DNA from: Macrostomum lignano
Lineage: Eukaryota
Assembly (NCBI GenBank): GCA_002269645.1
Contig: NIVC01000416.1
Span: 434,001-498,000, forward strand
DNA: 64,000 nucleotides
Direction of reading: 5' to 3'
The position numbers and the translations under genes are program-made. How positions within the stretch are numbered: position 1 is the stretch's first letter; each line of letters opens with the position of its first letter. Shown piece after piece: positions 17,783 to 23,648 of the stretch. The notes below the pieces were generated by a model. The model saw only the letters and a program-made list of their open reading frames with translations. It had not been told where the DNA came from and did not search any database.

Positions 17783-20700
17783 ATGGAGCGTCTTCATCAG
17801 CTACTAGGACTGCTTTTAGTCTGCTTCCGGGTCACCGGAGCCAGCATTGACTGCTCAGCTGAGCAGCGCACAGGTGAGTGGAGTCTGAGCTTACCTGCCT
17901 CAAACAGATCTATTGGTAGATACTATGAAATATGTTGCAGTGACAGTGCAGCTGAGCAGGGCTGACGTTCTGCGCACCTGGCAACCCAGCGGTGCGCACT
18001 GCCGTTGGTGGGAGAGTCGGCAGTCGGAGACAAACCGATTCCCTGCTGCTGTGCGGTCCGGGCCTCGGTGGCTTGTGATGCAGCTGAGGCAGCCGATGAT
18101 GCTGGAGGCGGTGAGCGTGCGAGACTGGGGTGAGTGACGCTGACCGACTCATTCTCATGATGCATGATGAGGCAGAGGGAGTCTGGGACACAGAGTGTGA
18201 GACCAGCTAGCATCTAATCAGCACTCTGAGACAGTGTGAGACCAGCTAGCATCTAATTAGCACTCTGAGACAGTGTGAGACCAGCTAGCATCTAATTAGC
18301 ACTCTGAGACAGTGTGAGACCAACTAGCATCTAATTAGCACTCTGAGACAGTGTGAGACCAGCTAGCAGCCAAGCACTCGTGTTGCAGATGGCCAGTGGC
18401 ACGTAGCAGCTCCGGTCGGCTCGCCCGTGTCAGCGGTCGGAGCCTCGAGCCTTCCGCTGGAGCTGCAGCTGGAGGACCCGTGCCGCGCCAGCTGGGAGAC
18501 CTTCAGCACCAGAGGCCGCTGGAAGCGGGTCGTAGCCGGCAGTCAAGCTCTCATCTCTTTCATCAGACTGACCAGCGAGAGCTCATTGAGTTGGCAAGCG
18601 TTGAGCATCACAGGTGAGCTTAAGTTTATATTTTTGCACACTGATTAGTGCTCTGATCCAGTAGCCTTTCCTCATCAGGCCGACAGCCACCGGTGCGGCT
18701 GAACGCAAGGCTGTCAAGCAAATACCTGAGCCACAGCTACGGCTTGATGGTCAGACGCAAGGTCCAGTCAAGAATTGCACTTTTTATCGATAGCTGCATC
18801 GGCAACAGGATTGTGTGCTGGCTTCTGCGATCTGAGGGCAGACTGAGCGCTGTGCATGTGAGCTTGTCAACTGTGCGACACCGCACAGGTGCATGTAAAG
18901 CCATCTTTAGTTAGTAATCCTTGCGTCTTTGCAGATTGCCTCGTCTACCGGTAATCAGCTTCAGCAGACCGGAGTACGGACAGCCAAGTTCGAGCTGGTC
19001 ATTGGAGAAGGCGACCAGGACAGTGTGGTGCAGTGCGCTCTGGCTGGGGACAGTCCAGGGACAGAGACTGTCCTACTTGAGGAGCCTCTGCTGTGGGAAG
19101 GTGTGTAGAGTTTGCTTTGGAATTGGTCTAAGCTGTTGGCTTGCACACTCGTATTGCACGTATTGCAGAGAATCTAATAATAGATTCTAATAATCTAATA
19201 ATCTATATGTTAACTCATTAACACATCCCAGTTCCAGCCAGAACTTTGAATTTGTCGGTGTCGCAAATTTTAATCATCGGTTTTGAGGCGGTAGTCAGCC
19301 TCACTTCGGAATCATTTCCAGAGGCTCGACATCGGTGCTCTATCAATAGGTCGCGTGGGTCGCATAGAAATCTGTCAATAACTCGCCAGGTGAATTTTGA
19401 TTGCTTTGCTTTTCATTTGCTTTAGGAAACTGCATGCAGTTTATAGTCATAACCTACAGTAGATTTCCATTGATGGTGGCTCCAAGGGAGTCAAAGTGTC
19501 ATATATCTGAATCCTGAATCAAACGCTGGTTTCAATGCGAAAATTTTGTGTAATGTCTCAAAATTTTCAGAAGATCTCCCGAGCAATCGATTTAAGGAAT
19601 CGAGCAGTTATCAGAGTTCAGTCGGAGTTCAGGTTCACATTGGAGGCTGCCGATCTCGGTGGCGAAATTGTCTGCTCGGGAGAAGTCGTCTCGAACCCGA
19701 GCGTGACGGAGAAGTTTCCGCTATTGAGAATCAGCGGTACGCGAAACTATTGTATATAAATTTAGCCCTCTGGGGCGTCAAAGTGGTTGCTGGGAAACTG
19801 CTAAAATTACGGGTGCCATAAAAGTTTCAAGAAGATCCTTGCCCTCACACCGTGCTACGCTGTTGACCCTGGTATAATGTTAATGGGGCTAACACGGATG
19901 TTAATGGGGCTAACACGGATGCTAAGAAGGCTAACACGGATATTAATGGCGCCTTTCTGCATGTTCCATGACGCCTATTAGGATGTTACTGGCGCTAACA
20001 CGGATGTTAATAGCGCTAACACGGATGTTAATGACGCTAACACGGATGTTAATGACGCCTATTAGAATTTTAATGAGGCTAACGCGGATGTTAATAGGGA
20101 TAACAAGGTTGTTAATGGGGCTAACACAGATGTTAATGGGGCTAACACAGATGTTAATGGGGCTAACACAGATGTTAATGGGGATAACACGGATGTTAAT
20201 CAGGCTAAGACGATGTTAATGGGGCTAACACGGATGTTAATGGGGATAACAAGGATGTTAATGGGGCTAACACAGATGTTAATGGGGATAACACGGATGT
20301 TAATGGGGCTAACACGGATGTTAATGGGGATAACAAGGATGTTAATGGGGCTAACACAGATGTTAATGGGGATAACACGGATGTTAATGGGGCTAACACA
20401 GATGTTAATGGGGATAACACGGATGTTAATCAGGCTAAGACGATGTTAATTGGGCTAACACGGATGTTAACGGCGCCAAAACAGATGTTAATGGGGCTAA
20501 CACGGATGTTACTGGCGCCAACACGGATGTTAATGACGCTAACACGGATATTACTGGCGCCAACACGGATGTTAATGACGCTAACACGGATGTTAATGAC
20601 GCCTATTAGAATTTTAATGGCGCTCACACGGATGTTAATGGCTCTAACACAGATTTTAATGGCGTCAATTTTCATGGTAACCCGCAGAGCCATGTCAGAC

Positions 20701-23648
20701 AACGGCAGACCTTGGTGAACGCCGACACTGGCAGGTGGGCGAGGCGTGGTGGATAGTGGTCACATCAAAAAATTGTAGCATCTGGAATGTGAGCCACAGC
20801 TGTCGGCTAATCATTCTTACGGGTGCAGGTGACGAACATCTCTCAGCTGCACCAATTTGGACAGTTCAAGTAAGCGTAATTTTTTAACGCTAAATTTAGA
20901 AGAACTTTTAGCTATTAGGGAGAAAAACTGATGCTCTAATTATCTAATTATTGATTATTAACATCCAGGTGGGAAGCTTCTCGAGCACCCACGCGTTGCT
21001 AGTGAACGAAGCGATGTCTCAGAATCGCTGGAAGATTCTGTGCAGCATCAATCAGTCTGCAGTTGCTTATCCAGACTTGGGGGTGCGCTCCGCCTCCGCC
21101 CCAGCTGTGTTTGGTGAGTGACTTCAGGTGCTTAAAATGCCTGAGACTATTTTGAGCTCAATTTGCATGCCGTATAATATGTACTTCCCAACCGGTATAC
21201 TTCAGGCTATACGAGTACTTCGCTTTCGTTTCTGGTTTTAACTTTGCTTCAATATGTCATTCACTCTCTTTTTGCCTTTTGTCTTTTTTGTCTCTCACTC
21301 TCCTATTTGGTCTTTGACTCTCCTATTTGGTCTTTGACTCTCCTATTTGGTCTTTGACTCTCCTATTTGGCCTTTGACTCTCCTATTTGGCCTTTGACTC
21401 TCCTATTTGGTCTTTGACTCTCCTATTTGGTCTTTGACTCTCCTATTTGGTCTTTGACTCTCCTATTTGGTCTTTGACTCTCCTATTTGGTCTTTGACTC
21501 TCCTATTTGGTCTTTGACTCTCCTATTTGGTCTTTGACTCTCCTATTTGGTCTTTGACTCTCCTATTTGGTCTTTGACTCTCCTATTTGGTCTTTGACTC
21601 TCCTATTTGGTCTTTGACTCTTCTATTTGGTCTTTGACTCTCCTATTTGGTCTTTGACTCTCCTATTTCTATTTGGTCTTTGACTCTCCTATTTGGTCTT
21701 TGACTCTCCTATTTGGTCTTTGACTCTCTTTTTGTACTTTACTCTTTCATTGTGCTTTACCCTTCCTTTTCTTTGATTTTATACTTTTCTCCTATTCATA
21801 ACTGCTCAAGGTTCTCCCTGCAACCCATTGCTATTTATCTTCTAGGAGCAGCGCACAAAGCCAGTCTGAATGTTCTAGTTGAGCATCTGTGCAGCAATAC
21901 GTTAAAAGTGCAGGCCCGTGTAAAATATCGGCATTACACTCTACCTGTAACGAATGTCACCTGCCAGATTGTTGGCAGTTCCGAGGTAGGAGAGGATCAA
22001 CTACAACTATCAAATAGTCTATTCACTATTCAGTGTTTTCTAATCAGAACTTCACGAGCGACTAAAACAAATTTAGCAGGACCTGACGATGCAACGAACA
22101 AGCCGGGACACCTGGAGTGCTCTCACTACCTGGTCTGACCTCGGGTCTCAGCCGAATCTCTTGGTGCGATGCATGGCTCTGCAGTTGTACTTTGGCGAGC
22201 TGGTCTTTAAAAGAACAGCTGAGGCCAGTGTAACTGCTGAAAGATGCTTTTGTGAGCTGCCATCGTCTAAAAAATGTCACTCAAAAATGTCACAAAGCAC
22301 TGAATATTCGGATTTTTAATTCCTTAATGTTTGCCCCCCCCTCAGGCGCGAACAAAAAGAAGCTGATTCATTACGCAATGACAGCTGCTGCAGCGCAACT
22401 CTTTATAATTGTCTGCGTTGCCGTGATCACCTGGAAACTAGCCTCTGTAAGTTCATGGTATCTATCTATCTATCTATCTATCTATCTATCTATCTATCTA
22501 TCTATCTATCTATCTATCTATCTATCTATCTATCTATCTATCTATCTATCTATCTATCTATCTATCTATCTATCTATCTATCTATCTATCTATCTATCTA
22601 TCTATCTATCTATCTATCTATCTATCTATCTATCTATCTATCTATCTATCTATCTATCTATCTATCTATCTATCTATCTATCTATCTATCTATCTATCTA
22701 TCTATCTATCTATCTATCTATCTATCTATCTATCTATCTATCTATCTATCTATCTATCTATCTATCTATCTATCTATCTATCTATCTATCTATCTATCTA
22801 TCTATCTATCTATCTATCTATCTATCTATCTATCTATCTATCTATCTATCTATCTATCTATCTATCTATCTATCTATCTATCTATCTATCTATCTATCTA
22901 TCTATCTATCTATCTATCTATCTATCTATCTATCTATCTATCTATCTATCTATCTATCTATCTATCTATCTATCTATCTATCTATCTATCTATCTATCTA
23001 TCTATCTATCTATCTATCTATCTATCTATCTATCTATCTATCTATCTATCTATCTATCTATCTATCTATCTATCTATCTATCTATCTATCTATCTATCTA
23101 TCTATCTATCTATCTATCTATCTATCTATCTATCTATCTATCTATCTATCTATCTATCTATCTATCTATCTATCTATCTATCTATCTATCTATCTATCTA
23201 TCTATCTATCTATCTATCTATCTATCTATCTATCTATCTATCTATCTATCTATCTATCTATCTATCTATCTAAATAGCGCCTTATGTTGACTTCAAGCGC
23301 TTATAGCAACTCGCTGTCGAAAATCCCCAGTCCCGAATTCGGAGACCGACAGCTCGGGATCAAACAGCTCGAACTGGTAGATTCGCAGGTCAGCCGGCAG
23401 TTCCTCTGAAACCACTGGCCGCGAATAAAGACGCTGCAGTCGCCAACACCGCTGCCACCTGCGATTCCGAGCCCTACGATGTCCCGACCAGCGACCGCGG
23501 CACTGCCAACGACTCCGCGTGGGTGTACGAGCGGGCGTCCGGTGGCAGCGCCTGCAGCTCGAGCCAGGCCGCACCGCCTCTGCCACCGTCGCGTTATGGC
23601 GACGAGGATGGCGGCTACATCAACTGGAAGAAGCTGCGACAGTCTTAA
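17783..23648 (+). CDS. Gene C: 13-exon single-pass receptor, discoidin(F5/8C)-like + 3 Ig-like + FN3/Ig-like + TM + Tyr/Pro-motif tail (751 aa predicted)
   Basis: Exons 17783-17873, 17941-18129, 18389-18613, 18679-18857, 18935-19100, 19232-19389, 19571-19736, 20688-20869, 20969-21113, 21846-21985, 22080-22251, 22346-22446, 23307-23648. All GT-AG, total 2256 nt, stop-free. Signal MERLHQLLGLLLVCFRVTGA; TM AAAAQLFIIVCVAVITW; tail with YDVP, VYER, PPLPPSR, GYINW. Domain labels by motif recognition only. Confidence 0.8.
18195..18367. repeat. 39-bp tandem repeat, ~4 copies, gene C intron 2
   Basis: Same unit as 12744-12830. Confidence 0.9.
19875..20660. repeat. 21-bp minisatellite (ttaatggggctaacacggatg) in gene C intron 7
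   Basis: Seen directly, degenerate at the edges. Confidence 0.93.
21295..21730. repeat. 20-bp minisatellite (tctcctatttggtctttgac) in gene C intron 9
   Basis: Seen directly. Confidence 0.95.
22458..23272. repeat. (TATC)n microsatellite, ~810 bp, gene C intron 12
   Basis: Essentially pure tetranucleotide run. Confidence 0.98.

What the first reader, a model, noticed from the sequence alone, without database searches (positions are those of the whole stretch)
17783..23648. 13-exon receptor (751 aa) with discoidin-like, Ig-like and FN3-like ectodomain and multiple tyrosine docking motifs
Seen: after a signal exon and two phase-1 exons (PRWLVMQLRQPMMLEAVSV, DGQW, FIRL; F5/8C-like), four exon pairs follow a repeating phase 1-0-1 pattern, each encoding ~105-115 aa. 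The first three pairs have a late Cys in an F-strand-like context (DQDSVVQC, DLGGEIVC, RWKILC). The last exon (23307-23648, absent from the ORF track) encodes EPYDVP, WVYER, PPLPPSR and DGGYINW. Established: 1-0-1 split exons are typical of Ig/FN3 domains; YDxP binds Crk/Nck SH2, YxN binds Grb2 SH2, PxxPxR binds SH3. Inference: a kinase-less signalling receptor analogous in layout to nephrin or Hydractinia Alr proteins, but with an N-terminal discoidin-like domain, a combination I do not recognise.
Basis: partly seen in the sequence, partly recalled or inferred. Interest (0 to 1): 0.8.

Follow-up and report, generated by a model that had tools for sequence, protein, structure and literature searches.

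The report
Flatworm Ig-receptor gene with shared cassette
This is a real 13-exon gene of the flatworm Macrostomum lignano for a membrane receptor with four antibody-like domains and a tyrosine-rich tail. It belongs to a large flatworm-only gene family whose members differ greatly except for one short N-terminal DNA block that is almost identical in all of them.

Summary
Thirteen GT-AG exons (17783-23648, + strand) give a 751-aa open reading frame with the stated phases and motifs. It is 97% identical to the RNA-seq-derived GenBank model BOX15_Mlig007224g1 of Macrostomum lignano, a second copy of the same locus.

AlphaFold2 and Foldseek show four tandem Ig-like domains, one per exon pair; top PDB hits are SYG-2/nephrin-type, KIT, nectin and LILR arrays. 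A transmembrane helix and a disordered tail follow. No domain looks FN3-like. The 'discoidin-like' N-terminal domain could not be confirmed: AlphaFold pLDDT about 30, Pfam F5/8C E=0.11, hhalign probability 1%.

Y[DE]xP and YxN tail motifs recur in divergent paralogues. Other paralogues carry ITIM or ITIM+ITSM motifs.

There is no orthologue outside M. lignano. The gene belongs to a tandemly arrayed family of at least 33 clusters.

Exon 2, intron 2 and the first half of exon 3 (about 17932-18505) are 93-99% identical in DNA among paralogues (exon 2 dS about 0.02-0.07). Elsewhere their synonymous sites are saturated, which points to gene conversion. Neighbouring genes with 86-90% identical ectodomains carry unrelated tails.

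Function is inferred, not shown.

The parts
17783..17873 (+). Exon 1: start codon and signal-peptide-like leader (MERLHQLLGLLLVCFRVTGAS...). It ends in phase 1.
   Evidence: It is 100% identical in the L002 copy. It cannot be aligned with paralogues.
17932..18505 (+). Homogenised 'constant cassette': exon 2, intron 2 with its 39-bp minisatellite, and the first ~115 nt of exon 3 (aa ~31-131). It is 93-99% identical in DNA to at least 8 paralogous copies on two other contigs. Its limits are sharp: the exon-2 acceptor on one side and the codons for ...ASWE on the other.
   Evidence: blastn and alignments. dS is 0.02-0.07 in exon 2 and 0.04-0.15 in the exon-3 part, against pS 0.67-0.81 in Ig domains D3/D4.
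17941..18129 (+). Exon 2 (phase 1 to 1): first part of the N-terminal ~145-aa cap domain, including PRWLVMQLRQPMMLEAVSV.
   Evidence: It is 94-99% nucleotide-identical to paralogues.
18194..18368 (.). 39-bp minisatellite (4.5 copies) inside intron 2. It is conserved in sequence but varies in copy number among paralogues.
   Evidence: Tandem Repeats Finder; blastn against L001.
18389..18613 (+). Exon 3 (phase 1 to 1): rest of the N-terminal cap domain. The first half is constant. The second half (from about 18505, ...FSTRGRWKRVVAGSQALISFIRLTSESSLSWQALSITG) is variable among paralogues.
18679..19100 (+). Exons 4 and 5 (1-0-1): Ig-like domain D1 (aa 169-284), with Cys208/215 and Cys262.
   Evidence: AF2 strands at aa 174-282 with pLDDT 52-67. 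The D1 of paralogue P0030 has pLDDT 73-87 and matches LILRB1, filamin, LAG3, KIR and NCAM Ig domains.
19232..19736 (+). Exons 6 and 7 (1-0-1): Ig-like domain D2 (aa 284-392). The Cys319-Cys371 pair is invariant in the family.
   Evidence: AF2 pLDDT 75-93; invariant columns; Foldseek.
20688..21113 (+). Exons 8 and 9 (1-0-1): Ig-like domain D3 (aa 392-501). Cys421-Cys477 plus Cys394/Cys430. This is the best conserved domain of the family (SxxCSxWNVSHSC).
   Evidence: AF2 pLDDT 69-88, mostly above 74; alignment.
21846..22251 (+). Exons 10 and 11 (1-0-1): Ig-like domain D4 (aa 501-605), with Cys540 and Cys578. An alternative NAGNAG acceptor lies at 22077.
   Evidence: AF2 pLDDT 64-84.
22346..22446 (+). 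Exon 12: transmembrane segment (LIHYAMTAAAAQLFIIVCVAVITW, aa 611-634).
   Evidence: AF2 helix at aa 609-638; hydropathy scan.
23307..23648 (+). Exon 13: cytoplasmic tail (113 aa, predicted disordered). It carries Y695 (EPYDVP, 23469-23486), Y712 (WVYER), PPLPPSR (23574-23594), Y735 and Y742 (DEDGGYINW, 23610-23627), then the stop codon. An alternative acceptor lies at 23331.
   Evidence: AF2 pLDDT 25-36.
19877..20662 (.). 21-bp tandem repeat (37.5 copies) filling intron 7.
21286..21728 (.). 20-bp tandem repeat (about 22 copies) in intron 9.
22459..23272 (.). (TATC)n microsatellite, 203 copies, filling intron 12.

Best explanation
The feature is an intact and probably expressed gene of the free-living flatworm Macrostomum lignano. 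It encodes a single-pass type I membrane receptor with this layout:
- a signal peptide;
- a ~145-aa beta-rich N-terminal cap domain of unresolved fold (possibly a lectin-like jelly roll);
- four Ig-like domains;
- a transmembrane helix;
- a disordered 113-aa tail with no enzyme domain.

The gene belongs to a multigene family found only in M. lignano in the libraries searched. The family is tandemly arrayed. Ectodomains and tails have diverged until synonymous sites are saturated. Yet one block, from exon 2 to mid-exon 3, stays almost identical among loci at the DNA level. The most likely cause is ectopic gene conversion. Neighbouring genes can share near-identical ectodomains but carry unrelated tails.

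Inferred mechanism (not shown): the ectodomain binds a cell-surface or soluble ligand. Cytoplasmic tyrosine kinases then phosphorylate the tail tyrosines, which recruit adaptors. Y695 (YDVP) would bind a Crk/Nck-type SH2 domain, Y742 (YINW) a Grb2-type SH2 domain, and PPLPPSR an SH3 domain. At the family level, the different tail types would give different outputs from similar ectodomains, as in paired recognition receptors. These tail types include Y[DE]xP/YxN, ITIM-like SVYLVL and ITIM+ITSM.
For: Shown:
- Exon model and ORF.
- 97% identity to P0001, and colinearity with its locus including introns.
- Both copies are intact, with pN/pS 0.42.
- Mlig_3_7 gene models such as P0001 derive from RNA-seq transcript assembly (PMC5730564).
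- Four confident beta-sandwich domains, a TM helix and a disordered tail in the AF2 model.
- Foldseek best hits are all IgSF ectodomain arrays. D1 of a paralogue hits LILRB1, KIR and NCAM Ig domains.
- Family-invariant Cys pairs and seven N-x-S/T sequons confined to D2-D4.
- A profile search of 1.84 billion representatives gives 35 hits. Of these, 33 are M. lignano and 2 are frog VCAM-1 Ig repeats at E 6e-8 and 7e-6.
- At least 6 family genes lie head-to-tail within 97 kb in L001 and 2 in L003.
- The cassette is 93-99% nucleotide-identical, intron included. dS is 0.02-0.15, against pS 0.67-0.81 in D3/D4. Flanks cannot be aligned.
- Paralogues P0043 and P0042 have the same domain at only 36% and 30% identity, so homogenisation is not universal.
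- P0017 and P0021 have 81-89% identical ectodomains but unrelated TM and tail. Both genes are adjacent in L003.
- Y[DE]xP occurs in five tail classes and Y[IV]N in three. SVYLVL occurs in one class, and VVYAQV...TEYTEI in P0042.

From established knowledge (my own, not tested here): pYxxP is the Crk/Nck SH2 consensus, pYxN the Grb2 SH2 consensus, PxxPxR a class II SH3 ligand, and the ITIM and ITSM consensus motifs.
Against: - There is no direct expression, localisation, phosphorylation or ligand evidence for this gene. No expression table containing it was found.
- No Pfam Ig family reaches even E=10 on the sequence, so the Ig assignment rests on predicted structure and two weak VCAM-1 hits.
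- The AF2 model was built on the 97%-identical P0001 with a shallow alignment of 16 sequences. Mean pLDDT is 57.8.
- The N-terminal domain is unmodelled.
- The window protein itself has no ITIM, ITSM or canonical ITAM.
- Short tyrosine motifs arise easily by chance in disordered tails, and only paralogues were available to test conservation.
- Gene conversion is inferred from the pattern of identity. No conversion tracts were mapped phylogenetically.
- Many UniProt family members are fragmentary or fused gene models.
Confidence: 0.6

Rival explanations
1. The protein is a structural cell-adhesion molecule of the nephrin/SYG/IrreC or nectin type, not a recognition or immune-type receptor. The Ig array would mediate homophilic or heterophilic adhesion, for example in epithelia, nerve, gonad or the copulatory organs. 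The YDxP tail motif would link to actin through Nck or Crk, as nephrin does.
For: The best Foldseek hit is SYG-2 D1-D4, and nectins, Necl-4, ICAM-5 and contactin rank high. The Y[DE]xP motif is the most widely kept tail motif. From my own knowledge, nephrin signals through YDxV-Nck.
Against: The Foldseek matches are generic Ig arrays with TM-scores of 0.2-0.35. No sequence relationship to nephrin, Kirre or nectin appeared in any search. Adhesion molecules of that type are conserved single-copy genes. This is a lineage-restricted, tandemly expanded, fast-diverging family with swapped tails.
Confidence: 0.22
2. The family is a reproductive recognition system (sperm-egg, seminal-fluid or mating-partner) that evolves fast under sexual conflict in this outcrossing hermaphrodite. 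The constant cassette would bind a common partner and the variable part would evolve antagonistically.
For: The family is lineage-restricted, tandemly expanded and saturated in divergence between paralogues. Reproduction-related genes evolve rapidly in Macrostomum, according to the title and abstract of PMC7336406 listed; I did not read the paper in full.
Against: No expression data place the gene in gonads or the prostate. The two near-identical copies of this gene show pN/pS 0.42, not above 1. ITIM/ITSM-type tails in relatives fit signalling receptors better than gamete-coat proteins.
Confidence: 0.1
3. The locus is a decaying or non-functional family member, or the conserved cassette is part of a mobile or repetitive element that merely mimics exons.
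For: The gene sits in repeat-rich DNA. Four of its introns carry tandem repeats. Transposons flank the region. Cassette copies are numerous.
Against: The 2256-nt ORF across 13 exons has consensus splice sites and is intact in two copies that differ at 30 sites, with pN/pS below 1. The counterpart model is transcript-derived. The cassette has no terminal inverted repeats, no Rfam match and no antisense ORF spanning it. In every locus examined it is followed by family exons in the same order and strand; the full set of Ig-domain exons was mapped for most copies but not all, e.g. c55k.
Confidence: 0.06

Closest known systems
Hydractinia Alr (allorecognition complex) family of IgSF genes (PMC9546547)
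   Same: Both are lineage-restricted, clustered multigene families of single-pass receptors. In both, the Ig-like domains escape sequence-profile detection but are recovered by structure prediction. In both, ectodomain sequences are highly diverse and the tails are too diverse to align, with some members carrying ITAM or ITIM motifs (compared).
   Different: No sequence homology was found. In Alr, each Ig-like domain is encoded by a single exon and there are 1-3 Ig domains plus an Fn3-like spacer. Here each domain is split into two exons (1-0-1), there are four Ig-like domains under a non-Ig N-terminal cap, and no Fn3-like spacer is evident. The near-identical N-terminal DNA cassette has no reported Alr counterpart, to my knowledge. 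Allorecognition is not known in this solitary flatworm.
Nephrin / SYG-2 / Hibris-Sns family
   Same: Both are kinase-less type I IgSF proteins with a tandem Ig array and a tail carrying YDx[V/P]-type motifs for SH2 adaptors. SYG-2 D1-D4 is the top structural match.
   Different: From my own knowledge, nephrins have about 8-10 Ig domains plus one FN3, are conserved single-copy bilaterian genes, and lack a non-Ig N-terminal domain. No sequence similarity was detected here.
Vertebrate paired immune receptor families (KIR, LILR/PIR, SIRP, Siglec/CD22; teleost NITR)
   Same: Both form tandem arrays of IgSF receptors. Near-identical ectodomains are joined to different TM and tail modules. ITIM and ITSM-type motifs occur in some members. 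LILRB1, LILRB3, KIR, SIRP and CD22 are among the structural matches. From my own knowledge, these families also undergo frequent gene conversion and domain shuffling.
   Different: No homology was demonstrated. No activating partner with a charged TM residue or a canonical ITAM was identified. The window gene itself lacks an ITIM. The N-terminal cap domain and its constant cassette are absent from those families.
Discoidin (F5/8 type C) domain receptors and adhesion proteins (DDR1/2, neuropilins, Caspr)
   Same: The module is N-terminal, about 145-150 aa and beta-rich. A P.WLxxxL...V.V motif aligns in register with the WLQVDL strand of F5/8C.
   Different: All tests are below significance: Pfam 13 bits against a cut-off of 28, and hhalign 0.2-1.3% probability. 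No terminal Cys-Cys clasp is present and no structure model was obtained. The F5/8C + Ig x4 + TM architecture is not one I know from any described family.

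Membership tests
Immunoglobulin superfamily (type I membrane receptors) | Tandem ~100-aa beta-sandwich domains with Ig topology | tested here: met
   The AF2 model of P0001 (97% identical) has four sandwiches at aa ~172-604, with D2-D4 at pLDDT 64-93, mostly above 75. Foldseek against PDB gives 575 hits at E<=1e-3, and the top ones are all IgSF arrays. 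D1 of P0030 matches single Ig domains.
Immunoglobulin superfamily (type I membrane receptors) | Conserved intradomain Cys pair (B and F strands) | tested here: met
   C319/C371 and C421/C477 are invariant or near-invariant across 16-17 paralogues. C208 or C215 with C262 in D1, and C540 with C578 in D4, are also present. Disulfide bonding itself was not tested.
Immunoglobulin superfamily (type I membrane receptors) | Significant match to a curated Ig sequence profile | tested here: not met
   No Pfam Ig, I-set, V-set or C2-set hit even at E<=10. The only link is a family profile hitting frog VCAM-1 Ig repeats at E 6e-8 and 7e-6.
Immunoglobulin superfamily (type I membrane receptors) | Signal peptide and a single TM helix, with the ectodomain N-terminal | tested here: met
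   Hydrophobic leader at aa 1-20. One TM segment at aa 611-634, predicted as a helix at 609-638. All sequons lie N-terminal to the TM except one. No dedicated signal-peptide predictor was available.
Discoidin / F5/8 type C domain | Match to Pfam PF00754 at or above the gathering score | tested here: not met
   No hit for the window protein. Only the divergent paralogue P0043 hits, at E=0.11 and 13.1 bits against a cut-off of 28.2, covering profile positions 12-54 of 127.
Discoidin / F5/8 type C domain | Profile-profile similarity to bona fide F5/8C domains | tested here: inconclusive
   hhalign against FVIII C2, FV C2, DDR1 DS and NRP1 b1 (sequences validated) gives probability 0.2% and 1.3%, E 0.28 and 0.039. 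Only 29-31 columns align, though in register.
Discoidin / F5/8 type C domain | Eight-stranded distorted jelly-roll fold | tested here: inconclusive
   Two AF2 runs left the domain at pLDDT 22-46, so no fold comparison was possible. The alignment of this region has almost no diversity because of the homogenised cassette.
Discoidin / F5/8 type C domain | Cys at both ends of the domain forming a clasp (metazoan F5/8C) | tested here: not met
   Cys24 lies near the start, but no Cys lies near the end (...SWQALSITG). The other Cys residues are at 51 and 125.
Nephrin / SYG-2 family | Sequence orthology, 8-10 Ig domains plus one FN3 | tested here: not met
   There are four Ig-like domains and no FN3 signal. 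No nephrin-family protein appeared among hits in 5.8 billion or 1.84 billion protein searches. Only generic structural similarity was found.
Hydractinia Alr family | Sequence homology; one exon per Ig-like domain; Fn3-like extracellular spacer | tested here: not met
   No cnidarian hits. The domains here are split over two exons each, against single exons in Alr (PMC9546547).
ITIM/ITSM-bearing inhibitory receptors | [SIVL]xYxx[IVL] and/or TxYxx[IV] in the cytoplasmic tail | tested here: not met
   The window tail tyrosines are EPY695DVP, WVY712ERA, SRY735GDE and GGY742INW. None fits. Paralogues do fit: SVYLVL in the P0003/4/18/19 class, and VVYAQV with TEYTEI 27 aa later in P0042.
Multigene family under concerted evolution (gene conversion) | A segment with near-zero synonymous and intronic divergence among paralogues whose remaining sequence is saturated | tested here: met
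   In the cassette, dS is 0.02-0.15 and intron 2 is about 96-98% identical. In D3/D4, pS is 0.67-0.81. The sharp limits are shared in 8 copies on two other contigs. The mechanism itself (conversion rather than recent insertion) was not tested.

The most novel reading that the evidence does not exclude
The family is a germline-encoded recognition-receptor repertoire specific to macrostomid flatworms. It may serve immune-type, self/non-self or mate recognition. The near-identical N-terminal cassette, with its internal minisatellite, would be more than a conserved binding surface. It would act as a shared homology 'handle' that promotes ectopic recombination, so that variable Ig ectodomains and alternative signalling tails are shuffled among loci. 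This would be analogous in logic to KIR/LILR domain shuffling or to conserved flanks in antigenic-variation gene families. If so, Platyhelminthes would have an independently evolved paired-receptor system with its own diversification mechanism.
Probability: 0.12. Interest if true: 0.8.

Novelty: new variant of a known kind. Interest (0 to 1): 0.5.

Why it matters
Free-living flatworms are regeneration and stem-cell models, yet almost nothing is known about their cell-surface recognition or innate-immune receptors. This gene points to a large IgSF receptor family that no sequence profile detects (no Pfam hit) and that was found only in M. lignano. It has hallmarks seen in vertebrate paired immune receptors and cnidarian allorecognition genes: tandem arrays, extreme divergence, swapped signalling tails and ITIM/ITSM motifs in some members. 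Independently of function, the roughly 570-bp block is a clean natural example of sharply bounded concerted evolution inside a gene. Within it, dS is 0.02-0.15 (0.02-0.07 in exon 2), against saturation elsewhere in the same genes. The block starts at a splice acceptor and ends in mid-exon. Such a case could be used to study gene-conversion tracts and their limits in a neopolyploid genome. The homogenised block also explains why many automated gene models of this family are broken at intron 2 and carry misleading names.

Tried and rejected
- Pfam on the full protein, on N-domains and on paralogues found nothing significant.
- PDB sequence searches with the protein, an N-domain profile and the P0042 N-domain gave only chance hits.
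- The profile handed to the 1.84-billion-protein search began at exon 3, because too few rows carried exon 2. The exon-2 half of the N-domain was therefore searched only by the word-based tool.
- A second AF2 run on the short paralogue P0030, with the divergent P0043 added, again failed on the N-domain.
- UniProt automatic names of family fragments cover nearly identical sequences yet contradict each other. They include 'F5/8 type C', 'NPHN', 'DUF2531', 'Bgal_small_N', 'VWFD', 'PLAT' and 'Spatacsin_C'. I did not treat them as evidence.
- I tested whether a mobile element or RNA gene explains the cassette. There are no inverted repeats, no Rfam family and no antisense ORF spanning it.
- I looked for expression data in three M. 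lignano papers' supplements and by gene ID in full text, and found none.
- A literature search for a described M. lignano Ig family found nothing relevant.
- I rejected the FN3 reading of the fourth exon pair. D4 keeps a conserved Cys pair, and the four-domain region as a whole aligns to Ig arrays (about 430-500 alignment columns). No per-domain structural comparison was run.

Full report
**1. The observation**

Reading 17000-24500 and translating all three forward frames let me rebuild the gene by hand. It has thirteen exons on the + strand: 17783-17873, 17941-18129, 18389-18613, 18679-18857, 18935-19100, 19232-19389, 19571-19736, 20688-20869, 20969-21113, 21846-21985, 22080-22251, 22346-22446 and 23307-23648. 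Every intron is GT...AG. The joined CDS is 2256 nt, encoding 751 aa.

Exons 1-3 each end in phase 1. Four exon pairs follow with phases 1-0-1 and encode 115, 108, 109 and 104 aa. Exon 12 carries a hydrophobic segment and exon 13 the tail.

**2. Origin and reality of the gene**

The protein is 97% identical over its whole length to GenBank 'hypothetical protein BOX15_Mlig007224g1' of the flatworm Macrostomum lignano (P0001). The window is colinear with that locus (L002, NIVC01001089.1) at 92-98% nucleotide identity, including introns and flanks. It is therefore a second copy of the same locus: an allele, a homeologue or another assembly. This fits the reported redundancy of this neopolyploid genome (PMC5730564).

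All 13 exons have the same length in both copies. They differ at 30 of 2256 positions, with pS 0.024, pN 0.010 and a ratio of 0.42. Both copies are thus intact and under mild purifying selection. Mlig_3_7 gene models were cut from RNA-seq-based transcript assemblies, so the counterpart is very probably transcribed and spliced in this way.

The deposited model differs only by a NAGNAG acceptor at exon 11 (adding Q) and an acceptor 24 nt further into exon 13 (removing QLAVENPQ). That gives 744 aa.

**3. Domains**

No Pfam family and no PDB sequence matches the protein.
- Residues ~172-604 form four beta-sandwich domains. D1 has pLDDT 52-67 and D2-D4 have 64-93, mostly 75-93. Their linkers coincide with the phase-1 introns between exon pairs.
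- Residues 609-638 form a helix, the TM segment.
- The tail is disordered.
- Residues 10-190 were not modelled (pLDDT about 30).

Foldseek against PDB returned 575 matches at E<=0.001. The top ones are IgSF ectodomain arrays: SYG-2 D1-D4 (5.6e-12), KIT, the IgM B-cell receptor, contactin-2, VEGFR-1, ICAM-5, nectins, LILRB3 and CD22.

In a second run on the short paralogue P0030, D1 reached pLDDT 73-87. It matched LILRB1, filamin repeats, LAG3, CD4, KIR and NCAM Ig1.

Cys319/Cys371 and Cys421/Cys477 are invariant or nearly so in the family, and D1 and D4 also keep a pair. Seven N-glycosylation sequons lie in D2-D4.

I conclude there are four Ig-like domains. Nothing supports calling any of them FN3.

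**4. The N-terminal domain**

Three tests were possible.
- Pfam F5_F8_type_C is seen only for the divergent paralogue P0043. The score is E=0.11 and 13 bits against a cut-off of 28, covering profile positions 12-54.
- I ran profile-profile comparison against four genuine F5/8C domains, whose sequences I first validated against PDB. It aligns only the P.WLxxxL...V strand. The alignment is in register, but probability is 0.2-1.3%.
- AlphaFold2 failed twice.

The metazoan F5/8C terminal Cys clasp is absent. More divergent versions of the same domain exist in P0043 and P0042, at 36% and 30% identity, and they align colinearly. The domain is therefore real. Its fold is open: a lectin-like jelly roll is plausible but not shown.

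**5. The family**

The word-indexed search of 5.8 billion proteins found 23 relatives, all M. lignano, mostly 31-44% identical. A family profile against 1.84 billion representatives found 35 proteins at E<=0.001. Of these, 33 are M. lignano and two are frog VCAM-1 proteins hit on their Ig repeats at 6e-8 and 7e-6. That profile started at exon 3, so the exon-2 half of the cap domain was searched only by the word-based tool.

The family is tandemly arrayed. The P0008 locus (L001) carries at least six members head-to-tail within 97 kb, and the P0017 locus (L003) carries two. The window holds only this one member.

**6.

In the protein alignment the stretch TVQLSRADVLRTWQ...LEDPCRASWE is almost invariant, while everything else is diverged. 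At the DNA level, identity between the window and eight paralogous copies on two other contigs jumps sharply. It goes from unalignable (exon 1 and intron 1) to 93-99% within a few bases of the exon-2 acceptor, at about 17932. It stays there through exon 2 and intron 2, including its 39-bp minisatellite whose copy number varies. It continues through the first ~115 nt of exon 3 and collapses again at about 18505, after the codons for ASWE.

Synonymous divergence inside the cassette is 0.02-0.07 in exon 2 and 0.04-0.15 in the exon-3 part. In Ig domains D3 and D4 of the same gene pairs, pS is 0.67-0.81, which is saturation.

The intron and the synonymous sites are conserved as strongly as the protein. 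Protein-level selection therefore cannot be the explanation. The block has been homogenised, most simply by ectopic gene conversion, or it spread recently. P0043 and P0042 show what the domain looks like when it escapes homogenisation.

I found no sign that the block is a transposon or an RNA gene: no inverted repeats, no Rfam match and no antisense ORF spanning it. The shared sharp limits may be self-reinforcing, because conversion cannot extend into diverged flanks. That last step is inference.

**7. Tails**

The window tail has Y695 (EPYDVP), Y712 (WVYERA), PPLPPSR (728-734), Y735 and Y742 (GDEDGGYINW). Among paralogue tails that cannot otherwise be aligned, several motifs recur:
- Y[DE]xP (YDVP, YEDP, YDYP) in five classes;
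- Y[IV]N (YINW, YVNY, YVNQ) in three classes;
- GHY[DE]xDGxTFVxY at the C-terminus in other classes;
- SVYLVL, which fits the ITIM consensus, in one class;
- VVYAQV followed 27 residues later by TEYTEI, an ITIM plus ITSM arrangement, in the distant member P0042.

From my own knowledge, YDVP is the Crk/Nck-type pYxxP motif, YxN the Grb2 SH2 motif and PxxPxR a class II SH3 ligand. DEDGGYINW also resembles the hemITAM DEDGYxxL, with one extra Gly and Trp in place of Leu. None of these bindings was tested.

The window protein itself has no ITIM or ITSM.

P0017 and P0021 have 81-89% identical ectodomains but unrelated TM and tails. Their genes are neighbours in L003: D4 is 86% identical, with tails at 5391-5603 and 12297-14436. 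This is the layout of paired receptors.

**8. Interpretation**

The best-supported reading is a functional type I IgSF receptor from a flatworm-restricted, tandemly expanded family. The family has a homogenised N-terminal half-domain, diversified Ig ectodomains and modular tyrosine-motif tails. Signalling through phosphotyrosine docking is inferred.

Whether the family serves immune-type recognition, adhesion or reproductive recognition cannot be decided without expression data. I found none.

**9. Comparison with known systems**

In layout and genomic behaviour the family is closest to the Hydractinia Alr family (PMC9546547) and to vertebrate paired Ig receptors. In predicted structure it is closest to nephrin/SYG-type arrays. 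It fails the membership tests for all of these. No homology was found, the exon structure differs (two exons per domain against one in Alr), the domain count differs and it has an extra cap domain.

I class it as a new variant of a known kind, namely IgSF receptors with tyrosine-motif tails. The gene itself is already deposited as an unnamed hypothetical protein. To my knowledge and by my searches, the family and the cassette are undescribed.

**10. Scores**

Interest is 0.5. The receptor architecture is less exotic than proposed, because the discoidin + Ig combination is unproven and the function is inferred. The sharply bounded concerted evolution and the paired-tail organisation are real, unexpected and testable.

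Noticed in passing
window 38852-39490, 47771-48409, 60951-61589 (+), with upstream exons near 38306, 47212 and 60401; weaker matches at 5444-5623 and 12989-13683: A 212-aa ORF is repeated three times. It contains a Cys-rich ectodomain end (...[18 protein letters not shown]...), a TM segment and the tail ...[23 protein letters not shown].... It is the last exon of a second tandemly repeated membrane-protein gene. The same family is fused upstream of IgSF family members in the UniProt models P0007 and P0014, so the two families may be recurrent neighbours. There is no Pfam hit.
   Followed up: partly
window 49840-52773 (-): An intact 977-aa ORF for a P-element/THAP9-like transposase. It has THAP, Tnp_P_element, TNP-like RNase H and GTP-binding insertion domains, all above the Pfam cut-offs.
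   Followed up: partly
window 27177-31144 (+): A Ty3/gypsy-type LTR retrotransposon gag-pol region in two long ORFs (protease, reverse transcriptase, RNase H, integrase). The ORFs are separated by a short gap near 29600.
   Followed up: partly
window 411-1694 and 2197-2847 (+): Two intronless ORFs of 427 and 216 aa. The second has a P-loop-like motif (GVAQSGKTT). Neither has a Pfam, PHROGs or PDB sequence match. They may belong to an unclassified mobile or virus-like element.
   Followed up: partly
window 5700-6600, 7750-8220, 9300-11350, 14900-16400 and 25440-27020: Long minisatellite arrays produce spurious repetitive ORFs on both strands, for example a 30-bp unit at about 8000-8217 that fills more than 2 kb in L002. 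Strong GC/AT skew marks these blocks.
   Followed up: no
window 16466-16748: The UniProt model P0002 extends the protein 5' into this region (about 90-97% identity). This probably translates 5' UTR or upstream sequence rather than real coding sequence.
   Followed up: no
L001 (NIVC01001776.1), 10001-87216: The GenBank gene for P0008 is annotated as spanning 77 kb. It joins 5' exons at about 10-18 kb to a duplicated 3' half at about 80-87 kb, across several other family members. This is probably a mis-join caused by the near-identical cassettes and duplicated exons.
   Followed up: partly
window 22167-22251 (-): A weak sub-threshold Rfam match to plant MIR399 (23 bits against a gathering score of 57, E 0.095) inside exon 11. 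I regard it as chance.
   Followed up: no
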